DNA from: Mytilus californianus
Taxonomy: Eukaryota
DNA length: 64,000 bases
NCBI RefSeq assembly: GCF_021869535.1
Contig: NW_026262701.1
Span: 58,590,001 to 58,654,000 of the forward strand
Direction of reading: 5' to 3'
Below, piece after piece: positions 1,644-60,115 of the stretch. Below the pieces are notes generated by a model that saw nothing but the letters and a program-made list of their open reading frames with translations, did no database searches and was not told the DNA's origin. Numbering within the stretch: position 1 is the stretch's first letter; each line of letters begins with the position of its first letter. Made by a program: the position numbers and the translations under genes.

Positions 1644-2334
1644 AAATTTATCTTACCGACTATCTTAACGTGTGGTATTTAAACTAATGGCATATCAAAG
1701 TCTTCCGTTGGTCTTTACAAAAACAAATGCCAACTGAAACAACTTGAAAGCTTTTAATGTGTTTTAGGAATTTATTTCAATCGTTCATCATCAATTTCTT
1801 CGTCTGTTGAAACCTTACAGATTTTTTCTCAACACCGTGTTGTTTTTACAAAGGGACGTAACACCAGAACTAACCGTGTATGGAAATAAATCACGCCTAC
1901 TAACCCCATATGAAATGTAAACGGTCTCCACGCCGTTGCTTTTAACTAATCATATACCTAGAAATGTATAAGAGGTAAGATAAAAAAAGATAGCGACCTC
2001 GTCCAATTGGACTTTTCTTGGTCTGTTAGATTTCATGTTATTAGGTTAAAAGATAAAAATAAGTTAAATTCGTCGTTTTTTTACCTGTATAAGAATGATT
2101 TTTTTTGGATCGAATCAGTCAACGAAATGGTTCACCTTTGTTTCACTTTCAATGTTGACATTCTTTTTACTTTTAATCGCTGAACACGACTAATACATGC
2201 GTAACCAATCTCTTGTTAATGGGTTAAATTGAAGGTTACATGGATACGGACCAATGAGGTCGAACTATCCACTTGCAAGTGAAAAATTCATAAGCGATGT
2301 TTTTAGCTTATTTTAACAAAATTGAACTAAACCT

Positions 2335-2790
2335 GTGCTAGTATCATGAAGCAATATTAGTGCATAAGATGATCTTAAGATGATCTTATCTGCTAAGAGT
2401 GTATCTTGAAGTAATCTTATAATGATTGACAGCCCTTAAAATGCATGTCGCACTCGCAACCCTAAGAGTACTCTTTATCCTTCTCGGAACGCTCTCTTAG
2501 TTTTAATCTTAACCACCGAGTATCTTGAACGTCGACAATCAAGTTAAGATCGTCTTTGATTACTCTTAGCAAATTTTAAGTGTATCAGCATTCTTTTTTT
2601 ACTGAAAACTGAACAGAAATTTCTAAGAGTGGTCAGGGGCACCCCTATCTCTCTCTTAGTTGATAAAATGGCGCTTGCAATGTTCTTGCTTGTGCGTTCA
2701 AGAGAGCAAAATAGGATATCCATGAGGATCTTCAGAGATGGAACAAATCCATTGGATTTCCTAGACGACAGTAGAATTATCCGTGATTAC
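2335..2790 (+). mobile_element. PIF/Harbinger transposon 5' fragment (subterminal repeats plus start of a HARBI1-like transposase)
   Basis: ATG at 2668 gives MALAMFLLVRSREQNRISMRIFRDGTNPLDFLDDSRIIRDY, resembling the N-terminus of Harbinger DDE nucleases (FRD-x-x-NPL-D/E...Y). It is preceded by repeated CTAAGAG/CTCTTAG motifs and truncated at about 2790. Confidence 0.6.
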
Positions 2791-2895
2791 AATATCGGAA
2801 AATGTCCCGAGTACATGTAACAGTATTTTTTTTCATCTGAATAACTGTCAGCATTGTTTTCGATTCATCTTTGTTAAAATTGGCTGTTCTTATAA

Positions 2896-3412
2896 TAAGA
2901 AGATGTGGTATGATTGCCAATGAGACAACTATCTTGCAAGGTTCAAATGAAGTGGATGTAAGCAATTGTAGGCAATCGTACGGCCTTCAGCAATGACAAA
3001 AACCCATACCATATAGTCGGCTATTAAAGGCTCCGACATGAAAAATATGAACAATTCAATTGAGAAACCCAACGGCCTAATCTATAACAAAACAGTTTAC
3101 GAAAAACAAATATGGCAGACATGAGCCAACGTCAACCACTGAACTACAAGCTCCTGATTTGGGACAGGCACATACAGAATGTGGTGGGGTAAACATGTTT
3201 GAGAGCGCTCAACCCTCCCCTAACCTGGGTCAGTGGAGTTACAGCAAGAGCAAACTCTGTAAATCAGTTGAAAAAGGCTTAACTAATCAGATCGATACAA
3301 AGCAGAACAGCTAACAAATACACAAACCGGACATGACGCATGGTATTTATACATCCCTAACAACAAAAAAGACACAAAGTATAGATCTGAGGGTACTCGC
3401 AGTTACTGACAG
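2896..3412 (-). mobile_element. Interspersed repeat family A (long form) with degenerate twister-like core
   Basis: Same gatgtggtatgattgccaatgagacaact terminus as 4297, 20110, 23680, 24590, 61180, 62960 and 63410. The core lies at about 3135-3235. Confidence 0.85.
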
Positions 3413-3584
3413 CTTGCTGATTTACTGATAACAAAATCAATATTCATACCAATAAAAATAATATTAAAGGTATAATGATTAGAGTGTTGAATTGGTAACC
3501 TTCTAGAATAAGTTTATTTGAAGGAGTGATAAGTCCTGATAAGTTTACCCGGATCCTTTCTAAATTTTCAGGCTCGGTAAACAA

Positions 3585-3879
3585 GAGGGTAAGAATGCCC
3601 TTTACCGTCAGACGCCAAACGGTCATTTTCGGCTACCGTTAACGTCAAAAATGGTGATTTGTCAAAATATCCTTGTCTTGATTCGTCACAGGTCTCAAAT
3701 AATCATTCGTTACCGTTTTATTTTTGGAAAGAATTTATCGTGATTCGTCAAAATCAGTCGTTTTTATCGTCATTAAGAAAATGTACATTTTATCGTCATG
3801 TATTAAAAATTACGTTAACGTCATTTGGCAAGATTTTTTTACCGTTATTCGTCATGAAGGTACCCCCATTACAACCCTC
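3585..3879. mobile_element. MITE with GAGGG...CCCTC termini and 6-bp TSD (AAACAA)
   Basis: TIR gagggtaagaatgccct / ggtacccccattacaaccctc. AAACAA is present at 3579-3584 and 3880-3885. Confidence 0.7.
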
Positions 3880-4289
3880 AAACAAAATCACCGTAAAAAT
3901 TAGGATCTGCTATTCTGTTTGAAATACGTTTTCTACAGGTAGAGCCGAACTCGCAATCCAAATCTGTGTATCTATGGAAAAATTTAGTTCAGGTTTTAAG
4001 TAATTTGAGGTAACGAAATCCTGGACTTAATCATTTTAATAATCTATCAGTAACACATATATTATGTTCATTGAAATCTAAAACGTCACTACAGACAAGG
4101 ACACAGCGGACGAGTTGGGAAATATAAACACCGCAAGACGGTGCCAGTGAAACATCACCGTCAAAAAATGAAAAATTAACAATAGGGAAAGAAAAATCAT
4201 CCCTTGTTTTCTTCGGACCGTTTGGAGCACCTCCTTCTGCCCTTTTTGTTTTTTATTCAATGTTTGAAAATATTTCTTTAGTATAAAAA

Positions 4290-4730
4290 AAAAGAGATAT
4301 GGTATGATTGCCAATGAGACAACTATCCACCAAAGTTCAAATGAAGTAGATGTAAGCATTTATAGGCAATCGTAGGGTCTTCAACAATGAGAAAAACCCA
4401 TACCGTATAGTCGGCTATAAAAGGAATAGACATGAAAAATATGAAACTATTCAATTGATAAAACTAACGGCCTAATTTATAACAAAACAATTCACGAAAA
4501 AACATATATGACAGACATATACTAACGACAACCATATGAGCAAAAAAAAAAAAAACGACAACCACTCAATAGCAATCAATGGTCAATAATCAACTAATGA
4601 CTTTGGACCGAGCTTTTGACAGGCACATATAGGATCATATAGAATATAAGGCGGGGTTAAATATGTTTCTAAGCGCCAACCCTCCCCTAAGATTGGACAG
4701 TGGTGTAACAGTACAACATAAGAACAACCA
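4290..4730 (-). mobile_element. Interspersed repeat family A copy
   Basis: Colinear with 2896-3260. The twister-like core at about 4610-4700 has a damaged L4. Confidence 0.85.
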
Positions 4731-5196
4731 ATAAAAACAAGTATTTTAAGTATGTTTTTCGACCGTTCTATTAAACGCACAGATGACTTTTACTATCGAT
4801 TTTGCCTTAATATTCTCTTCAAAAATCAAAGGCGATCACTTCGAAAAGTCGATAGGAGTACTATGTTTACTCGCAGTCGTATGTGTATACTAAGATAGCT
4901 GTAAAATTGTTAAGAGTAACCCACGAGGGGGTTTGGAGATACGCTCTTAGCACCATCGTAACTTTCTCGATAATCTCCATCACAGAGTTCATATCAGTTA
5001 CGAACGTGCTCTACAATACTTTAAGGTATAGAACTACGCAGTATGGAACGGAACGGGAATGATCTGTGTGCCGGAGATCGATCAGGAGAATGAAACCCCA
5101 TAAATCGAGGAAGAAGCGGTAAAATTTTAACAAATGTGATGTCGTCTGTGTATAATGTTTTTTTGGCGATTCCTGATTTCCCTTTTTACATCTTAA

Positions 5197-5509
5197 GAGG
5201 ATTAGATAGAGAGAGAAGGAACAAGGTCTTCATTTCTGTATTTTAAAAGTTTTTAGGCCATTTTTCTCTATTCATTATCCACCCCTCCTATTGTTCTCCG
5301 TTTTTTTATATATTTTCTAGCAACCCATTAGACTTTATTCTTTATGTGTTAGCTCCCTGTTACTTAAATTTAAGCACCCAATTATTTTCTATTCTATATT
5401 TATATTTAAGAACCCAATTATTCATTTTTCTTCCTTTTATTACTCATTTTTCTATTTTCTTTATTTTTTATCTATTATTCTCTAGTCTGAGAGTCCCACC
5501 CAGACCCTT
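5197..5509. mobile_element. Degenerate GAGGG-type MITE
   Basis: gaggattagataga ... cccacccagaccctt termini. The strongly purine/pyrimidine-skewed interior resembles the reverse of 6507-6808. Confidence 0.55.
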
Positions 5510-5779
5510 TATTATAATAACACAATACCTAATGTACTTGTTTCATGCCATGGTAAAAAAAACCTTCCCTCTTTGGTTAAGAAAGAAAAGGTGCTTTACC
5601 ATCGCATATATCAAGTGCCTGTGCAAAACACAGTTAAAGCGGGACTGAACTAAAATGCTCTGACAGGAAAAGCAACCCACAACCAGTTTCACTAGTGACA
5701 CCCATCACTCTGTCGTTTAATTCAAAAAGAAATCATTTCGTATCATAAGTTTTATTCCAATTGTAAGTAAAACATGAAA

Positions 5780-12438: not shown

Positions 12439-12574
12439 TTATATGGTTCGTTACTACCCCCCTACGGATCCATAGAGGGTTAGTAAAATCCAAAGGGTTT
12501 GGCTGAAGGCCGAATCTCCTATGGATTTTACTCACCCTATATGGTCCGTAGGGGGTCAGTAGTGAACCGTATAA
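12439..12574. repeat. Long imperfect palindrome with GGCT-GAA-GGCC mini-hairpin loop
   Basis: ttatatggttcgttactaccccccctacggatccatagagggttagtaaaatcca is inverted against tggattttactcaccctatatggtccgtagggggtcagtagtgaaccgtataa. An arm copy recurs at about 12700-12735, followed by aaccaatca. Confidence 0.85.
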
Positions 12575-14810: not shown

Positions 14811-17800
14811 CTTTACATACAAGAAGCACGAAGACAGAGTAAAAAGGCTTTCTTTAGGAGGGATCGCCTCTTCATAGATGGAGTTGCATTTTTTCCAACA
14901 GAGAAAACCGACCAGCAAAACTCTGGAGTGTCAAGACAACAACCGAGACGAAACTACGATGATGAAGGCGCTCGCCCAAAATCAACTCAAAGAAAAAACA
15001 ACGGGAGACGTTTCCAAAAACAATATTAGGACAACCCTGGAGGCAAAGATACAGAACGAAGTGACCAGTCAACCGATACCTGTGACTTTCACCTTTGTGA
15101 TTCGAATTTAACTGTAAATAAAACTGACAATATTATTAATCTGTTGTGTTTAAACGTATGTGGTATTAAAAATAGATTACTTTACCCTGAATTTAAATCC
15201 CTATTGTGTAATCATGACATTATCTGTCTTACAGAAACTAAACTAGATGATTGCGACTTAATTAATTGTGATGAATTTATTTTTAGTTTTAAAAATAGAC
15301 ACAAACTTTCTAACCATAGATCTGGTGGTATTGCATTGGGTTACCGGAAGTATTTAGAAAAATATATTAAACCTATTGAAACTGAATGCAAATGTGTTTA
15401 TTGGTATACTATTGATAAGAAAGTTTTAAATTTACCTGAAAACGTTTTTATTGGTATAGTTTACATACCACCAGTAAATACAAATTATACATCTGAAGAA
15501 GCTTTTAATGAGATAGAACTTGAACTTCAGAGATTTTCTGAAAAATCTGATTATATTATTTTGGTCGGAGACTTTAACAGTCGAACAGCAAATTTGTCCG
15601 ATTTTTATGATGAAGATGATATAGATGATTTTGTTATTGACTACCTTACTGATCAATCTGATTATACTGATGTATATATGTTAGACGATTTAAATATATC
15701 AAGAACAAGAAATAATCCAGACAAAGTTGTAAATTGTTATGGTAGAAAGTTTCTTGAATTTTGTAAAAATAACAAAGTATTTATTTTAAACGGTAGAGTT
15801 GGTCAAGATGTTATTGGTCGACCTACCAGTAGAAATAATAGTGTTATAGATTATATTGTTTGTACTTCACACTTTTTAAGATGCGTATCGAATTTTGAAA
15901 TTCTCGAATTTTCTAAACTTTTTTCTGATGTTCACTCGCCTATGAAACTATCTATTAATATCGTGAACCCTTCATTTGAACTACACACTACAGAGTTATC
16001 CTACCAAGAAGAAAGTAAAATTGGAAAATGGAAATTTGAGCAAGTGAATGATTTCAAGAATAACATAGATGGTGACAAAATAAGAAATGTTATTGATGAA
16101 TTATCTGTTTATAGTAATCAAGAAAATGTAACAAAATATGAAATAAATACTGTAGTTACAAATATTACTGATATTTTAATTGATTCTGCAAAAGCAACAT
16201 TTGGTACACATAATTTTAATGGAAATATGCTGAATTGTAATAGAAAGCATAATAAACAATGGTATAATTTTGATTGTAAAAAGGGAAAGAAAGAACTGAG
16301 AAAGGCACAAAGAATGTATAAACATTATGGGTCAAATTTATTTAAAGAACGATTACGACACTGTGAATATTACTATAAAAGTGTAATGGATGAACACATT
16401 AAGAAGTATAATAAAGAAATAAGTGATTATATGAAAAAATTAAAATTCAAAAATCCCAAAGAATTTTGGAAACTTTTTAACAGAGGTAGACAACGAGAAA
16501 AAAGCAATATATTGAAACTTTATTTGATTTTTTTAAAGAATTGAATGACAACAAGTTTGAAGACGAGTTTGTCATCGATAATGATTTGAACTCAAATCAT
16601 GTAAATGAGACACTGAATGGTGTAATTACACATGACGAGATTATTAAAGCTATTAAAAAGGCGAAAAACAACAAATCGCCAGGTGAAGATAAAATAATCA
16701 ATGAATATGTTGCAAATTCTCTTGACAGTATGATTGATGTATATTCTAAATTGTTTAATCTTATTTTTGATACGGGTATCTGCCGGAGGCCTGGCTTATT
16801 GGAAACATAATACCAGTGTTCAAGAACAAAGGATGTCAATAAGAAGCAAAAAATTATAGGCCTATTACTTTATTGTCATGCCTCGGTAAGATTTTTACAT
16901 CTATTCTTAATGATAGATTGGGGGAATTTGTTGATGAACTAAATATCTTGAACGAAAACCAAGCAGGCTTCCGACAGGGCTACTCTACCAACGATCATAT
17001 TTTTTCATTATATGCACTCTTCGAGTTGCTATGTGTCAAACGAAAAAAATTACATTGTGTATTCGTTGACTTTGAAAAAGCCTTCGACTTTGTTCAAAGA
17101 AACTCACTTTTGTATAAGCTTGTTTTAAATAAGATAACTGGTAAATTTCTTAGAATTGTAGAAAATTTGTATAAAGATGTTAAATCAAGAGTTGTACATA
17201 ATAATGAAGCATCTGACATGTTTGTAAGTGATATTGGAGTCCGCAAAGGAGAAAATCTTTCTCCTATATTATTTTCTTTATATTTAATGATCTTCATGGA
17301 TTTTTAGAAAATAGTGATTTAAAAGGTATACATTCAATTACTTCTGATATAGAAGATGAACTGGATATTTATTTTAAGATATTTGTCTTATTGTATGCTG
17401 ACGATTCGATTTTACTCGCTGAGACAAGCACAGATTTGTAATTACTTTTAAATAGTTTTTCTCAATATTGTGAAAAGTGGAAACTTAAAAATAATGTTAA
17501 CAAGACAAAGGTAATGATATTTTCAAAAGGTAGACCACAGAATAATTTGAAGTTTTATATTAATAACGAAGAGATAGAAATTGTTAAGAACTATAAATAC
17601 CTTGGTGTTATATTCTCTAGAAATGCTTCTTTTTTTGCAACTACAACATTTCTTAAAGACCAAGCTACTAGAGCTATGTATTGTGTTATTAAGAAGTGTA
17701 GATCTAACCATCTATCTATAGAATGCCAGCTCGATATGTTTGATAAAGCTGTTTTACCTATACTTTTATATGGGGCCGAAATCTGGGGATACGAAAATCT

Positions 17801-18652
17801 TGACATTTTGGAAAGGGTACATTTGAGTTTTTGTAAACATGTTTTACGGTTAAAAAGATCAACTCCAAATTTTATGGTTTACGGGGAATTGGGAAGATAT
17901 CCTATTTCTTTATACGTTAAATTACGGATGATAAAATTTTGGTGTAACCTTCTTGATAACACACTTGATAACAAGATTTCGTCAATTATTAATTATTAAT
18001 TTTAATAAGTATGGAATTGAAAACAAATGGTTGTTATGTATCAAAAGTATTTTTGATAATTGTGGAATGTCAAACATATGGCAAAATCAAGATTGTATCT
18101 CAAAAATATGGATTGTATTAAGCATTGAAAAAAAGTTAAAAGATCAGTTTAGACAAGAATGGCTAGCAAATGTAAATCAATCATCAAAAGGTCTATGTTA
18201 TAAATTATTCAAAACAGAACTTAAATTTGAAAATTATATTTCAATTTTATCGTTAAATAATTCACTGAAACTGAAAAATTGCAAAATGTTCAAAGACCCG
18301 AGAGACTATGCCACCTTTGTGAATCTACTGACATCGGCGATAAATTCCATTATGTAATGTCTGGTCCTTTTTTCAAAAAAGAACGATATAAATATTTACC
18401 ACACTATTGTTGTACAAATGTTAATATTCTTAAATTTAAAAATGTATTCACTACAGTCAATATTGTCTTACTAGAAAAAATGTGTAGATTTATAAACTAT
18501 ATCATGTGTATATATCAGTGAAAGTCTGTCCTCCTGATTAAATTACATTTATTTATGTATATTTCACACATGCAAAATATGTTGTATTTTGTTTATATTT
18601 TCATCTCTGTAACTATGTTATTTAGTTAATGAGAATAAAGATCTATCTATCT
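14811..18652 (+). mobile_element. 5'-truncated non-LTR retrotransposon (APE endonuclease-RT; RTE-X-like by C-terminal CxxC..H..C region), inactivated
   Basis: ORF1 tail 14820..15029 (QEARRQSKKAFFRRDRLFIDG). APE motifs LTETKLD, GDFNSRT and SVIDY..SDH lie in 15144..16544. RT pieces include NQAGFRQGYST, FVDFEKAFD, GVRKGENLSPILF, LYADD and YKYLG. Several frameshifts and a C-terminal deletion near 18278. The 3' end is AATAAA followed by an (ATCT)n tail at about 18634-18652. Confidence 0.92.
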
Positions 18653-18991: not shown

Positions 18992-20753
18992 CTGTAAAAA
19001 GCCATTTCAGAAATTCATTATTTCAGTGAAAATATATACGTTTTTATGTGTGAGTGTGAAAAAGAAAAACAAGCAACGCAACTATACATAATGTTTACTT
19101 TATGTAAGACTCAGACGTATACTGCATTTGTAATGAGCGACGGAACATTTTCACGTTTACCAGAATATAATTCAAATGAACAAAAAGTTCATAACACATG
19201 CACTATTTGTACGTGAGATACGTCAGATGCTAAAGTAATTAAAAATTGTGTCCCGCTTGTGTGTCTGTCTCCGTAATACTGTCACTAATGTGGGATGCTA
19301 AAAATAATACAATTCAAAACAAGCAGCCATTGATGTGATGGGTTCAGCTCTTTTCAAATGATTTTTATAGTTTGTTCTTATTATGTTGTAGTACACGTAG
19401 TACACGGTCGGGGGAAAAGTGTAGGGAGTGGATTCTTCGAACATGTTAAATTCCGCCACATTTTATGTGTGTCTATCCATAACCAGGAGCCTGTAATTGA
19501 GTGGTTTTTAATTGCTGTTATTTGTACCCGAGGATAGAAGAGTGCGGGCGCATTCAAACATATTTAACCCCGCGGTATTCTTTATGTGCCTATCCCAAGT
19601 CACAAGCCTGTAGTTTAGTGGTTGTCTTTGGCTTATGTCTGTCATATTTGTTTTGTTATAACTTATAACAACTTATTCGTTGTTCTATTGACACAAAAGG
19701 ACTAGTAATACACATAACCAAGAATCAAGTTATATTTTGTAGTCATACAGTATGAGTTATGCAATAAAGCGTATGTCTTTCGTTAAAATGTCTAGCGATG
19801 TTATCATATTATTATTAGGTTTATATATAATAAAAAAAACCGCATCCCAACAAAAATCTAAACTTTTCACTAGACGCTTAAAATTTATCCGAGTACTCGA
19901 GTACTCGAGAATTAACCTCAGATCTTTTGACATCCCCAGCTATAATTAGTTATCAAAGGTACCATAAGTTATTCCGTTAGTTTTCACAATTGATTTGCTT
20001 CATATTTTCCATGTCGGGGACTTTCATATCCGACTATACGGTATGGGTTTTTTCTCATTATTTTTTCTATAATTGCTCACATTCACTTCATGTGTAGTTT
20101 GGCTGGATGTTTTTCTCATTGGCAATCATACCACATCTCCTTATATTTATGGACAAAATAATAAACAATTTTAACAACAGTTAAATCAAAAACGTTTTAC
20201 CAAAGCGCTGTCAAGAGCCTTTGACCTTTGATCTCTTCACTAGATATAGTGCAGGATTTTCTTTTTCATCATCACGATTCTTTACTTTTAAGTACTGTCT
20301 TATGTTATTAATAATGTTTTCTCGTTTGAAATTTTATCAAAATTGTTGTGAGTCATGTGATATTTTGGTGTCTGCTCGGCGTTGTGTGTAGCATTTTTCA
20401 AGATAGAAAAAAACTTATAATTTCTTGCTTTGACTGATCGAATTGTATAGTCTTACACAATAACATACTTGTAACATAATATTAAGAATTGTCAACATTG
20501 TCAAATATATTGAATTTGATGGCAATTGCTTATATTCGCGACTTTCGCGTTTAGAAAATTAACGCGAATTTAAATCGTCGCAAATACGTGAAACTTTAAT
20601 CATCTCTTATATAATATATCAAGAAAATGAGAAGATCGCGAAAATAAATGACCGTGAAGTTGGCAAGAAATATCTTATCGCAAAATAGAGTATGAGCGAA
20701 AATGAGTTGGTTAACAGCTTTTGATATTTAGAATTATTCATTTCATCACTTAC

Positions 20754-23674: not shown

Positions 23675-24255
23675 GGATTATAATTGCCAATTAGACAACT
23701 CTCCACCAGAGATCATTAACAAACGACATATAAGTTAACAGCTATAGGTCACCGTACGGCCTTTAACAATGAGAAAATACCACACAGACAGATATAAAAG
23801 GCTCCGGATTGTTAAATGTAAAACAATTCAAACGGGAAAATTTACGGCCTGATTCATGTAAAAAAAACCAATGAAGGACATACAATTTACAGCAACAAAC
23901 GACAACCACTGAATTACAGGCTCTTGACTTGGGACATGCACATACATAATGTGGCTGGTTAAACATGTTAATTAGCGGTTTCTAATCCCCCATAACATGG
24001 GACAGTGCAACATATGAAAAAAGCAATAAAAATCAGTTGAAAATATTTAAAGGGATTAACTCATCAGATCAATATAAAGCTGAAAAACAAGTAGCAAAAA
24101 CACAGATCGGACGTTGCAGTGTATTACATGTATTACATTCATACAACAAACAAAAAAAAACACGAAGTACAGATCTGAGAGTACTCGCAGTTACTGACAG
24201 CTAGTTCAAAGCTAATAACAACTAATAAGAAAATCATATATATAAGACTAAAATA
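23675..24255 (-). mobile_element. Family A (long form) copy
   Basis: Colinear with 2896-3412, including the gtacagatctgagagtactcgcagttactgacag segment. Confidence 0.8.
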
Positions 24256-24279: not shown

Positions 24280-24625
24280 TCCCAGAGGGGAGGGTTAGGA
24301 TCCCGCTTACATGTTTAACCCCGCCACATTCTGTATGTATGTGCCTGTCCCAAGTCAGGAGCCTGTAATTCAGTGGTTGTCGTTTGTTCATGTGTAAGAT
24401 GCTTGTTTTTCGTTATTTTTTTTGTACTTTAATTAGCCGTTAGTTTTCTCGTTTGAATTGTTTTACATTAATTTTGTAATTTCGGGGCCTTTTATAGCTG
24501 ACTATGCGGTATGGGCTTTGTTCATTGTTGAAGGCCGTACGGTGACCTATAGTTGTTAATTTCTGTATCATTTGGTCTCTTGTGAAGAGTTGTCTCATTG
24601 TCAATCATACACATTTTTCTTTTTT
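24280..24625 (+). mobile_element. Family A copy with the best preserved twister-like core
   Basis: Ends in agttgtctcattgtcaatcatacac; inverted relative to 23675-24010. Confidence 0.85.
24286..24377 (+). ncRNA. Candidate type-P5 twister ribozyme
   Basis: AGGG GAGGG (24286-94) ... U^AA (24316-18) CCCC GC, P3 CACAU/AUGUG, P4 CCUG/CAGG enclosing UCCCAAGU (24348-55), then A-GCCUG..CAGUGG as the P5 3' strand. Confidence 0.7.
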
Positions 24626-24869
24626 ATATGTTTATAACAATAGTTTGGTTTTAATTGGTTCTAAACTAGTTCCATATACTCCTGTAATCTCAACTTTTTT
24701 TTATTAAAAATTGTTCCTCCTTTAAACATCCGAATATGTATTTTTGTTGTTGTTTTTGTTAAAACAACAGTGCAAGTTTATTTTTATGTTAATCAAACAA
24801 AGCAGATTCAGACGAGTATATATTGTTATAATTGTATCTAAGATAACAACAACAAAAATGTATACATAC

Positions 24870-38376: not shown

Positions 38377-38544
38377 CTAAATTCAAACAAATCATTATTT
38401 CAAGATACAACGTATGATCAATTCAATGTAAAATTGTTATTTGATTGGAGATCCATTATGTACGGTTTTTGATCCTTATATTAAAGAAGTTTTTCAGATG
38501 AAGGTAAATCTAGAAAAAGGCTTCGGCGCATGCAAAAAGTAAAA

Positions 38545-39290
38545 ACACAAAAATACTGAACTCCGAGGAAAATTCAAAAAGGAAAGTCCCTAATCAAATG
38601 GCAAAATCAAAAGTTCAAACACATCAAACGAATGGATAACAACTGTCATATTCCTGACTTGGTACAGGCATTTTCTTATGTAGAAAATGGTGGATTGAAC
38701 CTGGTTTTATAGCTAGCTAAACCTCTCACTTGTATGACAGTCGCATCAAATTCCATTATATTGACAACGATGCGTGAACAAAACAAACAGACACAATAGG
38801 TAAAAATGTCAAAAATAGGGTTACAGCAGTCAACATTGTGTTATCATCTTTGTCACTATAAAAACAAACAAATGTAACGAAGAAGCACAAGAAGGCATAC
38901 ATCAAATTTAACATCCTCATTTAGCTTATACTATACGATTTTATTTATCTATGTAAAATCCACCCATAAAGTATGGAAGGTTTTAAGAACTGGCGTAAAA
39001 TCACGAGTTTGAAATTCGCACAGGTAGACATAAAATAATTTTGTCGTTCAAAGTATGAAGAGATACATAAATACAGAGTCACGTAAAATGGATATCACAA
39101 AAAACAGACTTAACAGTAAAAGTAATATTAATAAAATAAAATAATTGTGTGGTTCAAATTATGACGGGATACATAAGTACAGAGTCACGTCAAATGTATA
39201 TCACAAAAAAACAGACTTAACAGTAAAAGCAATATTAATAAATAAAATAATTTTGTCGTTCAAAGTATTATGGGATACATAAGCACAGTA
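38545..39290 (-). mobile_element. Interspersed repeat family E copy with internal tandem duplication; twister-like core at 38642..38741
   Basis: aaaatactgaactccgaggaaaattc terminus (also at 35905 and, inverted, 39335-39665). About 130-bp units repeat at 39030-39290. Confidence 0.8.
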
Positions 39291-39334: not shown

Positions 39335-39665
39335 ATACCTCTGCTGGTAGTCTCCGAGTGTATTATCAGCTCAGTATTTAGTCCTTTGATATTTTTTTTT
39401 ACATTTTTGCCGATTATTTCTGTTTGTTTTGTTTACACATCTTTGTCAATATATTGGAATTTCATGCGACTGTCATACAATTAAGAGGTTTAGCTAGCTA
39501 TAAAACCCGGTTTAATCCACCATTTTCCTCATAAGAAATTGCGTGTACCAAGTCAGGAATATAACAATTGTTATCCATTCGTTTAATAAGTTTGAGCTTT
39601 TGATTTTGCCCTTTGATTACGGACTTTCCGTTTTGTATTTTCCTCTGAGTTCGGTATTTTTTATT
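39335..39665 (+). mobile_element. Family E copy, inverted relative to 38545-38830
   Basis: About 250 bp of clear colinear similarity; core at about 39468-39567. Confidence 0.8.
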
Positions 39666-40301
39666 TCACTTTTTGGTACTAACATGATTTCTAAATATTG
39701 TTTGTTTACAGATTTTGAAATTATAAAGAAACCAAAGTATCAACCGGTTCAGGCTTAGTTGACCTTAGACGGATTTGGGTATGCTTAGGCCAGGTTTTGT
39801 TATATAACTCTTCAACTGTTTCCGTTCTTATATATCCTTGGCTTTGAAATTTTTGGCTTTGAGCGTTCCTTATGAAGTTAATCCAGAAAAGCGCATCGAA
39901 GGTTATATCAGTTACTTAATTTCCCTTTTTAACATAAAGCATGGTTAAAAGAATCAAATGTCCTTGGATTTTTATATAATCAATTTTCATGATTGATGTT
40001 GGTTAAACATATAATTAATGTTTTTCTTATTAAGAAAGTAAAGAAGAGAAGTACACATTTTAAAAATTAATTGACAACTCTGTCAACATTACGAGTAAAT
40101 TGTATGCTTTCTGTGATACCATTTTTTATGTAAAAAGAGGTCAAATATGAACACATATGTTGAAAATGGTAACAGTAGTTTCATTTTCTTATATAGCATG
40201 TCAATTATAATCTAGTTTGCCAAATCAGGGTGACCATACACATTCAGATCTTAGATAAATATTTATAGAACTTTTCGTGATGATCAGATAACTTTGCTTA
40301 C

Positions 40302-48625: not shown

Positions 48626-49155
48626 AAAAGACCAAAAAAGTGAAAAAGTATATTTTAACAAAACGCATTTGACTAACAGGTCGAACAACAAATGTTCTTA
48701 AACCCTGCTGACTGCCATTGGCGATTGCCAAATAAACGGATCACCGATGTAATAAATGGATCTTAATTAAAAATTTAATACTAAACAGAAAACAATAAAC
48801 TTGCGGAAAAGATGATATACCGCAAACAAAAGGTGCAAAGGTTTTTGTACATCATATCCGGATTTCGACAATTAATGTCTCTTCAGTGATGTTAGGAATC
48901 GAAACGGTATTTGGAAAGCCATACAATTTACCTCAATTTAGGATAGACTCTTGAATTTTGAGGAGTCAAAATAGGATGAACGGATCATATAAACCCGAAG
49001 GCAAATATAATACAAGCCCAAACGGAAAAATATAAACAAGTCTAAATTGAAAACAACGTTCAAACCTAAGAAATTTGTTTTGCATGCACACGTATAAAAA
49101 TTGCGGTTTTTATCCAACGCAATCATAGGTTTGAACGTTGTTTTCAATTTAGACT

Positions 49156-49194: not shown

Positions 49195-49700
49195 TAACTG
49201 TTTATCTAGTTATATGGATTTATAATTGTGTAGTTTGTAATAAAGCTGTGGCCAAATACTGCCAAACTTTGTTTCTGATCTTTGCGCATCAATAATAATA
49301 ATAGGTTAAGAGGATCCATTGTGTGTGTACTATACAAATATGCACAGATGTAGTGTTTCAATTTATTTGTCATACAAAATTGCATGGTAAAATTAGCAAT
49401 AAAAGGACTTGCGGTGACCTCTAGTTGTAAATTTCTATATCATTTAGTCTCTGGTTGTGAGTTGTTTCATTGGCAATCATACCACATCTTCTTATTTTTA
49501 TATATATATATCAGTTGCACTGCAAATATTGATGACTTGATGGTTAAGTTGCAAGCTGGCAAGTTAAACAGTCTGATTAGATGAGACATTTTGCAATTGG
49601 AGTAGAATTATGAATGAACTATGATAGGTGGTTCGAAACACTAATGTTAAAGTCACTGTAATAAACAATTTTGTGTTTAACTTGTAGTAAATTTAAGTAG

Positions 49701-49806
49701 TAGAGAATTGATAAGAAGTAGTGGATTCGTAAACGATAATCAACGAGCGACTTTAGTCGCAAGTTGATTATCGTTTCCGAATCCACTACTTCTTATCAAT
49801 TCTCTA
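49701..49806. repeat. 106-bp near-perfect palindrome
   Basis: tagagaattgataagaagtagtggattcg-t-aaacgataatcaac-ga-gcgact TT agtcgc-aa-gttgattatcgttt-c-cgaatccactacttcttatcaattctcta. Confidence 0.92.
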
Positions 49807-50585
49807 GCTTAACCCATTTCTAGTAAAACGACGACTGTCTGTTGTATGTTTTGACAATGAATCAACGGAATTTCATAAAAATAATTTCGTATTTTGTCTT
49901 TTTTATTTTATAATAGCTGGAAATGATTATATCCACACGGTTCACGTCTATATTTAAGTTGACATAAGTTTAATATAACTTAAATGGGTTGTTAGCTCCC
50001 CTTTTTATTACCAGATTTCATACTTGTATATTTATATTTCATTTAATGCTTTATCATTACAAAGTATTTAAATTATATAGATTTTGGTATTTATGATTTA
50101 TTCAAAAAGACATATATAAATATACAGAATTTATTTATCTTTTTTTGAATAGTTAAAAAATTGTAATTACCAAAATTTAGAAACTTTGAAATTTACATAT
50201 ATAGTATTTAGCAATCTGCTATTGTTGACAGCTGATTAAGGATTGTCTACAATTTAACCGTACTAAGTCAAATACATATATTTAGCGTAGTTGCCATAAT
50301 ACTACAATTTCATGATGCTCCAGTTAATGATGCTTTCCGAAATAAATAAAATCATTGCTTAAGGTCTTTTTTGAACAATTATACATGAATTTTGTTTAAA
50401 CTGTTTCCCTTTCATTAAGTTTAGATTATTTTTAACGTTATTACATTTGGCATCCGTCGTAAACCAGTCAATAAACTAGTTTTATCTGTGGTACGCATTC
50501 TGAATCTCCAGCAGAATTGCTCTTGCTACAGATGTACAATGTATAATTATGTAATTTTTTTACTTTTACATTCAAGCTGTTCATA

Positions 50586-54844: not shown

Positions 54845-55910
54845 AAAATAGAGAATGGAAATGGGGAATATGTCAAAGAGACAACAACCCGACCAAAGAG
54901 CAGAAAACAGCGGAGTCCACCAATGGGTCTTCAACACAACAAGAAAATCCCGCACCCGGAGGCGGGCTTCAACTGGCCCCTAAATAAAAATGTGTACTTG
55001 TTCAGTGAAAATGAACGTCATACTAAACTCCAAAACATATAAATGAACAAAATTTAAAAAAAAACAAACAAGACTAACAAAGGCCAGAGGCTCCTGACTT
55101 GGGGCAGGCGCAAAAATGCAGCGGGTTAAACATGTTTTGTGAGATCTCAACCCTCCCCTATACGTTTAGCCAATATAGAATAAACAAACACACAGCAAAA
55201 CGCACAGTAAAACTCAGTTTAAAAGAAGTTCGAGTCCGATGTCAGAATAGGTGTTAAAAGAAACTAGACAAAATGACAATGATACATAAATTAACAAAGG
55301 ACTACTAGCAGTTACTGACATACAAGCTCCAGACCTCAATTCAACTGATTGAAAGATTATGTCTTCATCATCGATCATATGAAAATCAAGCACAATCCCT
55401 CCCGTTAGCGGTTTAGTATCATACCATCATAAAATATATGAGAAGAACATAACCCGTATCATGCCAATAACTGGTTTTAGAACAAATGTGTTTATTTCCG
55501 ATGCAAAGACCCTATGAGTGAATCAATATTAATACCAAAATATACCTTCTGAATAAGTCTGTTTACAGGTTTGATTAGCTTTGGGGTGAATGCCGACATT
55601 TTTGTGCTTTGTAAAGAATATTACCATAAAAGATTGGATGTAAAATACCTGAACGTTTAAGATGTCTGCATGTTGATTTATATTTATGAATAATGTCCTT
55701 GTACCGGTGATAAAATTAAGTAAATGTTTTGACAAGTTTGTGATATCGAAAACCCTGGTGAAATAATTTTTCAGTAATACAGAGATTTCTTTCATTAAAA
55801 TCAAATACGTTGTTACATACACGAGCGAATCGAACAAGTTGAGATATATAAACACCATACGATGGTGACAAGGGAACGTCACCATCTAAAAATGGATAAT
55901 TAACAATAGG
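54845..55910 (-). mobile_element. Penelope-like family B copy: RT C-terminus, then 3' region with twister-like core (55082-55170)
   Basis: RT C-terminal sequence homologous to 10140-11048. Continuous through cagttactgaca and the core to the aaaatagagaatggaaatgggg terminus. Confidence 0.85.
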
Positions 55911-57486
55911 ACATGAACAATCATAAATTTTGGTATTAAATTTCCCGTTGAAGATATAGACATCAAGATCCAGGAAAGGACAGTGTTCATTGTTGGTGTT
56001 AGCTTCATTTAAAGTAATTTGTATCTACCCCCTCAAGTATTTTCAGGGATAGAACACTATTTGATAACACATAAATCGCTCTCGGGTCTGTAAACGTCAA
56101 TAAAAATATCATGGTAACAATTCATAATACATGTTCATGTATTTGAAATACAAATCCTTCTGCAAACATTTGCTCAATTTGTTTTTGTTTTTAAATATAA
56201 GACGTTTTGTGCAAAGCTGTAAGTAAGCGACAATATTTGCTTGACATATTTAACATCATGAAAAGCACAACTGAGTTTTATTGGTCAATATGTAAGCAAT
56301 AACATGTGTCTTCGCCTCTAATATAATTTACAAATCATATATAGCCACACCTTACTCTTTAGATTAATTATGTAATCAAACAAAGCTACGCTTTTCGTGC
56401 AGTATACAATTACGTTCATTCGTAAAAGGCGTTCTTTAAATATAACTTGTACATCAGAATTATGCATTTAATCTTTTATATATTAATATTTTTAAAATCA
56501 TAAAATTTATAAATTTTAATAAAATAAACAAAACAACAATAAGGAAGTATAGAAATAACGTAAGACATCCCAGTATACTTAATACTTATCCTAATGTTAT
56601 GGTTTTTAAATGATGATTATCGTCATTGAATAAATAAAACTTATTCAGGTATAACATAAGTGTATTGATTGTATATTGTGATTACTTATACAGGAGGCAA
56701 ATAGATTTTGCTTTAAATTAAAAGAATTTTAAAATCACGTTTGTAAAAGATATCTTTTTCTATTTTTTGTTTTTACATCCTACATCTCCTTTCATTTATA
56801 CTTATAATTGTGATCACTGTTCTTATTACCATTACGGTTGATACGTAGATGAATCCGTCTATTGACTTCACCAATACCGCGTTATTCATAATTATTCACA
56901 CTGGTTTGCCCTTTACATGCGGGGCAGTGATGAACACAGAGTTTATATTGATAAGGAAAACACATACGGCAATTTGATCAAAATGTGCCTTTTCAACCGT
57001 GTATCCAACATGTTAAGTTTTTAATGCGCTGTAAATTTATAGAAGTCTTGTGTTGATAAATGTCTTTCCACAACTATTTTATTCACCTGAGCTTATCAGA
57101 GTGCGATGTACAATAACCAATTACAAACTGGACGAACAACTATTTTCTGGCAAAACTGTCTTTTACCCAGGGCAACAGGTACATGTAAGGTTAAAGGTAA
57201 ATAACACAAAGATTCAGAAGCCAGTTTATAAATGATTTGATAGCCAGCTAATATTAAAATCACTGAAATTCAATCCGTTGAATACATGCAATTCGCTGTC
57301 AAAGTAAATCACGTTAACATTATTATCAAAGATTTCCTTCTCGCCAGTCGGTCCAATCCAATCAACTCTCCAATTTCAGAAGACAATTATGTTAGAAAAA
57401 TTTAAACAAAAAACTTGTGTACTTATGCTCCTTATTTAGACCCAAACGAAAGCGGATGCTACATTTGTACATCAAGTTTGGCATTT

Positions 57487-59196: not shown

Positions 59197-60115
59197 CGGT
59201 TAGTGTCAGGTTGTACTTTTATTTTTAAGTCGTTCTAACAACTTAGATAACTCTCTATAACGACTTATCTAACTCGTTATAACGACTTAGCTTATCTTAC
59301 TCGTTATAACGACTTAGCTTATCTTACTCGTTATAACGACTTAGTAACTCGTTATAACAACTTAACTTGGTTAACAATTATAGGTCGAAGTACGGCCTTC
59401 AACACGGACCCTTGGCTTACACTGAACAAAAGGCTATAGAGGGCCCAAAAATGACTAGTGTAAAACAATTAAAACAGGAAAATCAATGGGCTAATCTATA
59501 TAAAAAACGAGAAACACCTTTGAACCACACCAACAAAAGACAATCACGGAACAACAGGCTCCCGACTTTGACAGGTGCATAAAAATGCAGCGGGTTTAAA
59601 GGTTTTAACAGGCACCAACCTTCACCCTAACCTGAGACAGTAGTGTAACATTACAAAATAAAAAGGACACACTTCATTTCTAATTAATGAGCACTTAGTC
59701 GAAATTTAGAAAACTATAAATAAAAATATAATCGAAAATAAATCACGACCAAGATATTAGGGGGTTTGTTAAGTCCTGAAATTAGGAAAGTAGCTAAGTC
59801 GTTATAAAAAGTAAGCTAAGTAATATGGTATTTGAAAATTATTATTTTTGGTACTCTGATAGCTAGGTCATTATAACGAGTTAGCTAAGTTGTTATAACG
59901 TGTTAAAAAGTCGGTATAACGAGTTAGATAAGCTAAGTCGTTATAACAAGTTAGCTAAGTCGTTATAACAAGTTACCCAAGTCGGTTTAACAAGTCATCT
60001 AAGTCGTTATAACAAGTTATAGCTAAGTCGTTATAACATGTTAGCAAAGTCGTTATAACAAGTTAGCTAAGTTGTAATTGAGTTTTAAAAAAAAACTTCA
60101 ACCTGATACTAACCG
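59197..60115. mobile_element. Foldback-type element with short TIRs and inverted subterminal tandem arrays; family A' inserted
   Basis: cggttagtgtcaggttg / caacctgatactaaccg; arrays of 20-25-bp units built on tcgttataacga at 59235-59365 and 59790-60075. Confidence 0.8.
59385..59655 (-). mobile_element. Family A' copy; twister-like core at 59555..59634
   Basis: Minus strand: CAGGUU A GGGU GAAGG ... UAA ACCC GC ... CCUG UCAAAGU CGGG AGCCUG. Confidence 0.75.

What the first reader, a model, noticed from the sequence alone, without database searches (positions are those of the whole stretch)
24286..24377. A dispersed superfamily of type-P5 twister-like ribozymes shared by unrelated repeat families
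Seen in sequence: at least 12 repeat copies (about 3135, 4610, 19400, 19530, 23905, 24286, 26050, 27473, 38642, 39468, 55082, 59555, 60895, 63600) from families with different bodies (A/A', B, C, E) share one core in the order P5-P2'-GAGGG-linker-UAA-P2-GC-P3-P4-UCCCAAGU-P4'-A-P5'. Established: the twister core is U^AA-P2-GC-P3-P4-UCCYAAGC-P4'-P5-P2'-GARGG, with permuted types P1, P3 and P5. Covariation between families: pseudoknot T1 GAGGG/UCCC (24290-94, 24348-51) becomes GAGGU/UACC (38721-25, 38661-64; also family C); T2 GC/GU becomes AC/GU; P2 CCCC/(A)GGG becomes ACCC/GGGU with GAAGG (59591-59627). P3 and P5 differ entirely in sequence but stay paired (CAGGUU/AGCCUG, ACUGUCAUA/UAUGACAGU, UGCCAUA/UAUGGCA). 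Inference: short family A has this motif at its 5' end and no A/B boxes, so it may be a ribozyme-headed rather than tRNA-headed retroelement. P2 is short or uncertain in families C and E, and most copies are mutated.
Basis: partly seen in the sequence, partly recalled or inferred. Interest (0 to 1): 0.92.

Follow-up and report, generated by a model that had tools for sequence, protein, structure and literature searches.

The report
Twister ribozyme module in Naiad retrotransposon tails
The repeated core is real: it has the fold and the key bases of a twister self-cutting RNA, and it sits in the tail of Naiad-type jumping genes (described as lacking ribozymes) and of their short derivatives, but cutting is not shown and RNA reads show no cut ends.

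Summary
Across 68 distinct copies, 91.7% of the proposed pairs form, both pseudoknots included. Controls with the 3' partner slid by 1-3 columns give 27-43%. The bases needed for twister catalysis never vary among 18 family representatives.

The families are related, not unrelated. The module lies about 330 nt after the stop codon of a selenoprotein-coding Naiad Penelope-like element, downstream of its SECIS. It recurs in Naiad relatives with 48-62% RT identity from four other assemblies and a thyasirid clam metagenome. Families A, A', C and F are tail-derived elements without an ORF.

The copy at 24286 is a 5'-truncated, slightly decayed A' copy, so it is not "ribozyme-headed". Stem P1 is replaced by two self-complementary stretches, with 13 distinct perfect palindromes among 15 representatives at the first site. 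That suggests pairing between two RNAs.

Limits:
- Rfam Twister-P5 scores 17-23 bits, below its gathering score of 37.6.
- Raw RNA-seq shows no pile of molecule ends and no dip in depth at the predicted cut.
- Three more distant Naiad-like elements lack the module.

This scan reached the same reading earlier on other stretches of this genome.

The parts
24284..24361 (+). Twister-like module of a 5'-truncated family A' copy (element 24286-24632). P2' 24286-89, T1 strand GAGGG 24290-94, palindrome 1 GGAUCC 24298-303, palindrome 2 ACAUGU 24309-14, predicted cut U24316^A24317, P2 24319-22, PK1 GC 24323-24, P3 24325-43, P4 24344-47/24356-59, L4 24348-55, P5' AGCCUG 24360-65.
   Evidence: sequence; Rfam Twister-P5 17.4 bits, E 0.13, same register; R1 77.7 bits; aligns to positions 221-546 of a 590-base extract of a full-length family A copy
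3151..3223 (-). Family A copy (element about 2891-3414), decayed. One A of the UAA is lost and L4 reads UCCCAAAU.
   Evidence: (73.1 bits)
55091..55160 (-). Module in the tail of a degenerate Naiad copy. P2 is reduced to 3 bp by one loss on each strand, and L4 reads CCCCAAGU.
   Evidence: (63.4 bits)
55376..55440 (-). SECIS-like element upstream of the module in the same Naiad remnant.
   Evidence: SECIS_1 26.5 bits, gathering score 35; intact relative L023:5136-5200 scores 31.7 bits, E 3e-4
55578..56024 (-). Degenerate C-terminal reverse-transcriptase remnant of the Naiad element.
   Evidence: translation; 47,404 genomic first-look candidates, open frames up to 537 aa
59559..59629 (-). Family F copy (GAAGG, ACCC/GGGU) with a 1-nt deletion in L4 and a mutated palindrome 1.
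   Evidence: 57.2 bits
60902..60979 (+). Family A-like copy. Its 5' half is intact and P4/L4 is destroyed.
   Evidence: 50.8 bits
23921..23994 (-). Family A' copy (element 23679-24202), head-to-head with the 24286 copy. GAGGG and P2 are mutated.
   Evidence: 43.8 bits
38651..38731 (-). Family C copy (element 38533-38815): GAGG+UU, L4 UACCAAGU, PK1 AC, palindrome UAGCUAGCUA, P5 ACUGUCAUA/UAUGACAGU. P2 has only 2 bp.
   Evidence: 37.3 bits
39482..39559 (+). Family C copy (element 39395-39675), head-to-head with 38651. P2' and P4 are mutated.
   Evidence: 22.8 bits
27480..27556 (-). Family C' copy: palindrome GGCUAGCC, P5 UGCCAUA/UAUGGCA.
   Evidence: 28.1 bits
26060..26121 (-). Family C' copy with an internal deletion that removes the cut site, P2 and P3.
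   Evidence: (20.1 bits)
4606..4690 (-). Decayed A-like copy with a broken L4/P4.
   Evidence: 35.4 bits
19422..19489 (+). Decayed copy.
   Evidence: 31.4 bits
19538..19606 (+). Decayed copy. GAGGG is lost and P4 is broken.
   Evidence: 22.4 bits
63627..63671 (-). Copy truncated inside the module. It lacks P2', T1 and most of the linker.
   Evidence: 14.7 bits

Best explanation
The shared core is one conserved RNA module, not a chance motif and not a SINE core. It has the fold of a circularly permuted (type-P5, with P3) twister ribozyme.

It belongs to the 3' untranslated tail of Naiad Penelope-like retrotransposons. In intact elements it lies about 330 nt after the stop codon, downstream of a SECIS, and about 290 nt before the element's 3' end. 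Short elements made of the tail alone (families A, A', F) or of tandem repeats plus tail (family C) inherit it. There are on the order of 10^5 copies in this 1.65-Gb genome.

The copy at 24286-24632 is a 5'-truncated, slightly mutated A' copy.

Shown:
- The fold, both pseudoknots, the invariant catalytic bases and the link to Naiad.
- The replacement of stem P1 by two self-complementary stretches.

Inferred:
- The RNA self-cleaves at N^AA (U24316^A24317 in this copy), using the A after the cut as general acid and the G of GAGGG as general base, as in known twisters.
- The two palindromes pair between two copies of the RNA, so cutting is conditional on a dimer. Penelope-like hammerheads are reported to work this way.
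- The module processes tandem or read-through element transcripts.
For: Link to Naiad:
- L023 holds an element at 2096-5730. All of its in-frame stops are TGA (2238, 2331, 2364, 3639), with TAA at 5082.
- The TGA codons fall in CX4UxxC, before the GIY-YIG motif, between IIY and YVGET, and 8 aa after DKA. These are the selenocysteine positions that Craig et al. 2021 describe for Naiads (PMC8557442).
- A SECIS lies at 5136-5200 (31.7 bits, E 3e-4) and the module at 5397-5494.

Conservation:
- RT homologues with 48-62% identity carry the same architecture after their stop codon. They come from four other assemblies and a Thyasira cf. gouldi metagenome.

Structure:
- 91.7% of 1151 cells are paired, against 27-43% when the partner is slid.
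- The covariation score is 0.424 against at most 0.064, with 160 double-change cells against 8-14, and 0 of 500 shuffles reach the observed values.
- The pseudoknots were not in the model. Alone they give 87.7% paired against 13-44%.
- In 18 representatives, T1 position 3 is G-C 13, A-U 4, U-A 1. PK1 is G.U, A-U, C-G or U.G. P2 is CCCC/GGGG, GCCC/GGGU, CCAC/GUGG or ACCC/GGGU.
- The G and A of GANGG and A6 of L4 are invariant, and A5 is kept in 17 of 18. A1 and A2 were required by the parse.
- P5 duplex z-scores are -3 to -9 in 12 of 15 families.

Palindromes and Rfam:
- 13 distinct perfect palindromes occupy site 1. Site 2 holds AAACAUGUUU, AAACGUUU, AAACCGGUUU or AAACUAGUUU.
- Rfam's best family for the stretch is Twister-P5, in the same register.
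- P1 is dispensable and wobbles in the pseudoknots are tolerated in tested twisters (PMC11662667).
Against: - No cleavage is shown.
- Raw RNA-seq reads from four runs were laid on L023:4700-5900. No place near U5440^A5441 has molecule ends reaching a fifth of the depth. Depth is flat across the site, and both strands are covered about equally. Most reads therefore look like read-through of dispersed copies that stay uncut.
- Rfam scores are below the gathering score: 17.4 and 23.1 bits against 37.6. The whole-window scans list nothing.
- There is no P1 in cis.
- Family C has only a 2-bp P2 and a 2-bp T1.
- A cut 290 nt before the 3' end would separate the ORF from the tail that copies share, so constitutive cutting would seem harmful to the element.
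- Three more distant Naiad-like elements (34-45% RT identity) show no such module.
- The nested helices of alignment A3 were fitted by the model, which inflates their pairing.
Confidence: 0.72

Rival explanations
1. It is a conserved structured element of the Naiad tail that keeps a twister-like fold but no longer cuts, or never did. It might serve instead as a recognition or dimerisation signal for the element's reverse transcriptase or for RNA packaging. The palindromes would then act as a dimer linkage.
For: - No cut ends and no dip in depth in RNA-seq.
- P1 is absent in cis.
- The position 290 nt from the 3' end makes constitutive cutting costly.
- Elements without an ORF share exactly this tail, as expected for a feature recognised in trans.
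Against: Every base that twister catalysis needs is kept across lineages with only 48% RT identity, while the helices change sequence freely. The bases are the A after the cut, the next A, the G and A of GANGG, and AAG of L4. A mere scaffold would not need all of them, although several also make tertiary contacts.
Confidence: 0.2
2. The core is a SINE-type conserved central domain or a chance look-alike of twister. It would be shared by unrelated tRNA-derived or other SINE families.
For: - A loose twister descriptor alone is not significant in the window (3 hits against 1.56).
- Rfam scores are below the gathering score.
- Family C contains GGTTCAATCC, which looks like a B box.
Against: - ARAGORN finds no tRNA-like sequence in the window.
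- The 'B box' is palindrome 2 plus the cut site plus P2.
- The module is physically linked to Naiad ORFs.
- Both pseudoknots covary.
- Copies show variable 5' truncation and head-to-head inverted pairs, as Penelope-like elements do.
Confidence: 0.03
3. The two palindromes act at the DNA level, for example as sites for the element's GIY-YIG endonuclease or as hairpins during second-strand synthesis. They would not be RNA-RNA dimer contacts, and the twister would work as a monomer without P1.
For: - The palindromes are perfect Watson-Crick in nearly all families, as DNA sites would be.
- P1 is dispensable for twister cutting in vitro (PMC11662667).
Against: - Thirteen different sequences at one site argue against a sequence-specific protein site.
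- L047 has AACUGGUU, which is self-complementary only with G.U pairs, so only as RNA. This is a single case.
- The palindromes sit exactly where the two strands of P1 would be.
Confidence: 0.15

Closest known systems
Twister ribozyme, type P5 (Rfam RF02684, clan CL00120; Roth et al. 2014, cited from my own knowledge; features as tested in PMC11662667)
   Same: - Order P5-P2'-GAGGG-[P1 region]-N^AA-P2-GC-(P3)-P4-L4(UCCCAAGY)-P4'-P5'.
- Two pseudoknots: GGG with CCC of L4, and GC with GY of L4.
- Invariant AA after the cut, G-A of GAGGG, and AAG of L4.
   Different: - No hairpin P1 joins GAGGG to the cut site. Two self-complementary stretches of 6-10 nt sit there instead.
- L4 ends in U or G, so PK1 uses G.U, A-U or U.G.
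- Some families have a 2-bp T1.
- Scores are below Rfam's gathering score (17-23 bits against 37.6).
- Activity is untested.
Hammerhead ribozymes of Penelope-like elements, which cut as dimers (Cervera and de la Pena 2014; Lunse et al. 2017, as summarised in PMC6765202)
   Same: - A small self-cleaving motif built into the terminal repeat or tail of a Penelope-like element.
- A closing stem reduced to a short palindrome that can pair only between two copies.
- Elements often lie in tandem or inverted arrays.
   Different: - A different ribozyme class (twister, not hammerhead).
- A different clade. Naiads have an N-terminal endonuclease and were reported to lack canonical hammerheads (PMC8557442).
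- Two palindromes rather than one.
[quoted passage not shown]
   Same: A twister-type ribozyme that is a built-in, high-copy part of a retrotransposon.
   Different: - In S. mansoni it lies at the 5' end of an element with an AP-type endonuclease. Target-site duplications abut the cut site, and cutting is shown in vitro and in reporter constructs.
- Here it lies in the 3' tail of a Penelope-like element. Copies do not start at the cut site, and cutting is not shown.
Naiad Penelope-like elements, including the selenoprotein-coding families of clams and spiders (Craig et al. 2021, PMC8557442)
   Same: - N-terminal GIY-YIG with CX2-5CxxC and CCHH fingers, the DKA motif and a C-terminal RT.
- UGA at the conserved cysteines, and a SECIS just after the stop codon.
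- Length of about 3.6 kb, very high copy number in bivalves, and inverted or tandem insertions.
   Different: That paper searched for hammerheads only and reports none. No twister is mentioned in it (0 occurrences).
Retrozymes: retroelements without an ORF that carry hammerheads and form circular RNAs (PMC7229834, PMC7761336, bioRxiv 10.64898/2026.07.22.740005)
   Same: Short derivatives without an ORF that keep the ribozyme-bearing terminal part of an autonomous element.
   Different: - The families here are mostly dispersed single or inverted copies, not tandem ribozyme pairs.
- No back-joined reads at the site were seen.
- The ribozyme class differs.

Membership tests
Twister ribozyme (Rfam clan CL00120) | Helices P2 and P4 with the pseudoknots T1 (GGG of GAGGG with CCC of L4) and T2/PK1 (GC after P2 with GY of L4) | tested here: met
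   - helix pairing is P2 90%, T1 84%, PK1 93%, P3 97%, P4 92%. Controls with the partner slid give 27-43%.
- the pseudoknots alone give 87.7% against 13-44%.
- compensatory pair types at P2.1, P2.3, PK1.1, T1.3 and P4.1-3.
Twister ribozyme (Rfam clan CL00120) | Conserved catalytic and core bases: A1 and A2 after the cut, G (general base) and A of GAGGG, and A5-A6-G7 of L4 | tested here: met
   -, 18 representatives: G 18/18, A 18/18, L4 A6 18/18, A5 17/18, N-1 is U 16 and C 2.
- AA was required by my parse, but it also aligns without gaps in the unbiased MAFFT alignment A1.
Twister ribozyme (Rfam clan CL00120) | Stem P1 formed in cis by the bases just 5' of the cut site and just 3' of GAGGG | tested here: not met
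   No complementarity exists between these two stretches. Each is self-complementary instead. P1 is reported as dispensable for cutting (PMC11662667).
Twister ribozyme (Rfam clan CL00120) | Score at or above Rfam's gathering score | tested here: not met
   - Twister-P5 scores 17.4 bits (window copy) and 23.1 bits (intact L023 copy), against 37.6.
- twister-P1 scores 14.5 bits on L044.
- Nothing is listed in the whole-window scans.
Twister ribozyme (Rfam clan CL00120) | Site-specific self-cleavage that leaves 5'-OH and 2',3'-cyclic phosphate ends | tested here: inconclusive
   In raw RNA-seq from four runs, no place at the predicted site has ends reaching a fifth of the depth, and there is no dip. 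Ordinary RNA-seq of mostly read-through copies has little power here. No biochemical test is possible with these tools.
Naiad clade of Penelope-like elements | GIY-YIG endonuclease N-terminal to the reverse transcriptase, with CX2-5CxxC and CCHH fingers and the DKG motif changed to DKA | tested here: met
   - L023 translation: C-HAKK-U-LT-C, IIYLLT-U-NKPG-C-GIQYVGET, PADKA, then the RT motifs PKLHK, SFDFSTLYTTLPH, GIPMGTNCAP and RYLDDIL.
- This was read by eye against the description in PMC8557442.
- Pfam and PDB sequence searches gave no significant hit.
Naiad clade of Penelope-like elements | Selenoprotein-coding subtype: in-frame UGA at conserved cysteines plus a SECIS just after the stop codon | tested here: met
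   - All four internal stops of L023 are TGA, at the positions the paper names (PMC8557442).
- The SECIS_1 match begins 52 nt after the stop codon and scores 31.7 bits, E 3e-4. That is just under the gathering score of 35.
Naiad clade of Penelope-like elements | No canonical hammerhead | tested here: met
   No hammerhead family appears at E up to 10 in the window or in the L023 tail.
tRNA-derived SINE | tRNA-related head with A and B boxes | tested here: not met
   ARAGORN finds nothing in the window. Full-length A/A' copies begin with sequence related to the Naiad 3' UTR.
Retrozyme | Unit flanked by two ribozyme copies in tandem, yielding circular RNA | tested here: inconclusive
   Window copies are single or head-to-head inverted. 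There is no well-supported back-join in the reads. Tandem arrays elsewhere in the genome were not surveyed.

The most novel reading that the evidence does not exclude
Naiad retrotransposons, thought to be the Penelope-like clade without a ribozyme, use a twister in place of a hammerhead. Its P1 is split into two intermolecular helices, so it cuts only when two element RNAs, or two tandem copies, pair. That would be an independent second origin of dimer-gated self-cleavage in Penelope-like elements. With roughly 10^5 copies, it would be one of the most abundant ribozyme families in any animal genome.
Probability: 0.35. Interest if true: 0.85.

Novelty: new variant of a known kind. Interest (0 to 1): 0.68.

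Why it matters
Penelope-like elements other than Naiad and Chlamys carry hammerheads whose role is still unclear. Naiads were taken as proof that such elements can thrive without a ribozyme.

A twister in the same place would overturn that reading. It would show two unrelated ribozyme classes recruited to the same job. It would also give a second, independent case of a closing stem turned into a palindrome, which makes the dimer idea testable with simple RNA assays.

The result also explains one of the commonest repeated strings in this bivalve-type genome. It warns annotators that these 'SINE-like' families are tails of Penelope-like elements.

In the library I could search, no paper links twister to Naiad or to Penelope-like tails. 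One survey lists bivalves among organisms with predicted twisters but gives no detail (PMC11662667), and its supplementary tables are not held here. Some of these sequences may therefore already be catalogued as candidates.

Tried and rejected
- **LINE tail.** An AP-endonuclease + RT LINE lies at 15144-18357 (+), upstream of the copies at 19422 and 19538. It ends near 18650 and the two copies are separate fragments, so I rejected this reading.
- **tRNA-SINE reading of family C.** Rejected (the parse).
- **Protein family searches.** Pfam on the Naiad ORF pieces gave no hit even at E 10. phmmer against PDB chains gave nothing significant. The clade was therefore assigned from motifs read against the paper's description.
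- **Descriptor-only significance.** A loose descriptor gives 3 hits in the window against 1.56 in shuffles, so it carries no weight by itself.
- **In vivo cleavage.** I looked for it in raw RNA-seq and found no ends, no dip in depth and no step in depth at the site. This also argues against many genomic copies starting at the cut site.
- **Generality across Naiads.** Three elements with 34-45% RT identity (L059, L060, L061/L062) have no module. The tests were R1 with filters off, Rfam at E up to 10, and a strict descriptor in both permutations. L060 has only 132 nt after its stop codon, so it says little.
- **Literature.** One search returned only irrelevant papers. The supplementary tables of the twister survey are not held.
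- **Alignment caveats.** MAFFT alignment A1 puts families X, C and N one column out of register in P2' and T1, so I did not count pairs on it. In A3, row L047 is out of register in T1. Its true GAUGG/UCCA pair is therefore scored there as unpaired.
- **Dimer folding.** ViennaRNA gives dimers 7.6-17 kcal/mol below two monomers. Any hairpin RNA can domain-swap in such a calculation, so this is weak support only.

Full report
**1. What is at the coordinates**

The elements are (A)GGG, GAGGG at 24290-94, a 22-nt linker, U24316^A24317-A, CCCC, GC, a P3 hairpin, and CCUG-UCCCAAGU-CAGG, followed by AGCCUG.

The 14-mer core with up to 3 mismatches occurs 16 times in the window, against 2.2 expected.

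Rfam lists nothing at gathering scores, and no twister at E up to 10 on the whole window. An intact relative, L023:5410-5476, reaches 23.1 bits with E 0.0025.

**2. What the repeats are**

A self-comparison of the window shows that the 24286 copy continues for about 300 bp downstream. Other copies also extend about 200-290 bp upstream.

*Families A and A'.* Genome-wide, family A is an element of about 520 bp with more than 14,800 first-look candidates. Family A', to which the 24286 copy belongs, is about 560 bp long. Six of eight sampled copies carry about 215 nt upstream of the motif. The window copy aligns only from position 221 of a 590-base extract of a full-length copy. It is therefore a 5' truncation, not a "ribozyme-headed" element.

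*The link to a coding element.* The copy at 55091-55160 (-) lies downstream of a SECIS-like hairpin and of a degenerate reverse-transcriptase C-terminus. That protein piece has 47,404 first-look candidates in the genome.

*An intact relative.* L023 holds an element at 2096-5730.
- Its reading frame is interrupted only by four TGA codons and ends in TAA.
- The translation shows C-HAKK-U-LT-C, IIYLLT-U-NKPG-C-GIQYVGET and PADKA-7 aa-U. RT motifs follow: PKLHK, SFDFSTLYTTLPH, GIPMGTNCAP and RYLDDIL.
- This is the Naiad arrangement: endonuclease first, with DKA in place of DKG. The TGA codons sit at the conserved cysteines that Craig et al. 2021 give for selenoprotein-coding Naiads (PMC8557442).
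- A SECIS lies 52 nt after the stop codon (31.7 bits).
- The twister-like module lies at 5397-5494, and the element ends near 5730.

Pfam and PDB sequence searches gave nothing for the ORF, so the clade assignment rests on these motifs.

*Family C.* It is young (95-99% identity), shows variable 5' truncation, and has internal tandem repeats of about 105 bp. No ORF lies within 1.5 kb.

*Insertion pattern.* Three head-to-head inverted pairs in the window fit the insertion pattern of Penelope-like elements: 23921/24284, 38651/39482 and 59559/60902. ARAGORN finds no tRNA-like sequence.

**3. Conservation elsewhere**

The RT piece has thousands of homologues. I fetched the DNA of homologues with 48-62% identity. 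They came from four other assemblies and from a metagenome of the clam Thyasira cf. gouldi (identified through PMC7807488).

Each carries the same order of elements about 250-540 nt after its stop codon. The order is a long P5, P2', GANGG, UU, palindrome 1, a short spacer, palindrome 2, N^AA, P2, two bases of PK1, a P3 hairpin, P4 and L4. The helices differ in sequence between lineages.

Three more distant elements (34-45% identity) show no such module by three methods. One of them has only 132 nt of downstream sequence. As far as tested, the module marks one large bivalve-associated Naiad subclade, not all Naiads.

**4. Is the fold supported?**

I built covariance model R1 from nine copies, using only the nested helices P2, P3 and P4.
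- It finds 77 copies in the 252 kb I held, including all 14 window sites.
- It gives about 259,000 rough first-look candidates in the genome.

I counted pairs on its alignment (68 distinct rows) with both pseudoknots added.
- 91.7% of 1151 cells are paired, against 27-43% when partners are slid by 1-3 columns.
- The covariation score is 0.424, against at most 0.064.
- 160 cells changed on both sides, against 8-14.
- No shuffle of 500 reaches the observed values.

The nested helices were fitted by the model, which favours them. The pseudoknots were not in the model, and alone they give 87.7% paired against 13-44%.

My own parse of 18 family representatives gives 209 of 222 cells paired. It shows these changes:
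- P2: CCCC/GGGG, GCCC/GGGU, CCAC/GUGG, ACCC/GGGU.
- T1 third position: G-C (13), A-U (4; GAAGG with UCCU), U-A (1; GAUGG with UCCA in L047).
- PK1 first pair: G.U, A-U, C-G, U.G.
- P4 at three positions.

The G and A of GANGG and A6 of L4 never vary, and A5 is kept in 17 of 18. These, with the AA after the cut, are the positions whose change abolishes or strongly lowers twister activity in the large survey (PMC11662667). The AA was required by my parse, but it also aligns without gaps in the MAFFT alignment.

P5 is a strong duplex in 12 of 15 families, with z from -3 to -9.

Those families have GAGG followed by the invariant UU, and a sister family has U opposite U.

**5. The missing P1**

The bases after GAGGG and the bases before the cut site are not complementary to each other. 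Each stretch is self-complementary.

Site 1 holds 13 different perfect palindromes among the 15 representatives: UGAGAUCUCA, GAGCGCUC, GGAUCC, UGGUACCA, GGGCCC, UAGCUAGCUA, GGCUAGCC, AGGUACCU, AUGGCCAU, AGGAUCCU, GGCGCC, GGGAUCCC and CGGGCCCG. Five different central tetranucleotides occur among them.

Site 2 holds AAACAUGUUU, AAACGUUU, AAACCGGUUU or AAACUAGUUU, with imperfect forms in three families.

A hairpin would leave the central bases unpaired and free to vary. Their palindromic covariation points to pairing between two molecules, or to a constraint at the DNA level. Dimer folds are predicted to be 7.6-17 kcal/mol more stable than two monomers, which is weak support.

The parallel is the hammerhead of other Penelope-like elements. 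Its stem III is reduced to a palindromic loop, and it is reported to cut as a dimer (PMC6765202).

**6. Does it cut?**

This is not shown. I laid raw reads of four RNA-seq runs on L023:4700-5900.
- Both orientations are covered about equally.
- Depth rises smoothly towards the element's 3' end, as expected if reads follow the number of 5'-truncated genomic copies.
- Depth is flat across U5440^A5441.
- No place near the site has molecule ends reaching a fifth of the depth.

Efficient constitutive cutting of these transcripts in vivo is therefore not supported. There is also no sign that many genomic copies start at the cut site.

The result is compatible with conditional (dimer-dependent) cutting, with re-ligation, or with a non-catalytic role.

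**7. Verdict**

It is wrong about unrelated families and about a ribozyme-headed element.

The closest known things are:
- type-P5 twisters;
- the dimeric hammerheads of Penelope-like elements;
- the 5' twister variants of Perere-3 in Schistosoma (PMC8501958).

I found no paper linking twister to Naiads. One survey mentions predicted twisters in bivalves without detail.

Earlier notes of this scan reached the same reading on other stretches of this genome. I used them as leads and re-tested the claims here.

Noticed in passing
L023:2096-5730 (G000:C13:5056500-5062800); remnant at window 55376-56024 (-): Near-intact Naiad elements here code for a selenoprotein. Four in-frame UGA codons sit exactly at conserved cysteine positions, and a SECIS follows. 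Craig et al. 2021 reported this for clams and spiders. This 1.65-Gb bivalve-type genome holds tens of thousands of RT copies of the family.
   Followed up: partly
window 15144-18357 (+): A non-LTR retrotransposon remnant: an ORF with an Exo_endo_phos endonuclease (E 3e-8), followed by RVT_1 (E 1.6e-14). It ends near 18650 at a (TCTA)-like microsatellite. It is unrelated to the twister copies downstream of it.
   Followed up: partly
window 49689-49813 (both strands): A long, near-perfect inverted repeat scores 38.9 bits against Rfam mir-268 (gathering score 47, E 5e-4). It is probably a transposon-type hairpin rather than that microRNA.
   Followed up: no
window 39030-39288: Tandem repeats of about 105 bp lie between the two head-to-head family C copies. 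The same repeats occur inside longer family C copies elsewhere (L028-L039).
   Followed up: partly
window 2760-3540; L002-L009: The family A copy at 2891-3414 shares at least 120 bp of flank on both sides with eight other genomic copies. It is therefore nested in a larger repeated unit.
   Followed up: no
window 48849-48892: Another first-stage note calls this an intact hammerhead ribozyme. The Rfam scan of the whole window at E up to 10 lists no hammerhead family, and I saw no obvious CUGANGA...GAAA core on the + strand.
   Followed up: partly
L059, L060, L061/L062 (metagenome and Tara contigs): Full-length Naiad-like ORFs of 962-996 aa without in-frame stops, with 34-45% RT identity to L023. 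No twister, hammerhead or SECIS match appears in their available 3' sequence.
   Followed up: partly
L023:5430, 5484, 5399 in RNA reads: Expressed copies mostly differ from L023 at three places in or next to the module: T>C at 5430, A>G at 5484 and C>T at 5399. The two changes in P5 turn Watson-Crick pairs into G.U wobbles rather than mismatches.
   Followed up: no
window 12454-12559: A palindromic hairpin of about 100 nt gives weak matches on both strands to a plant microRNA family (25.8 bits against a gathering score of 83). It is probably an inverted-repeat element.
   Followed up: no
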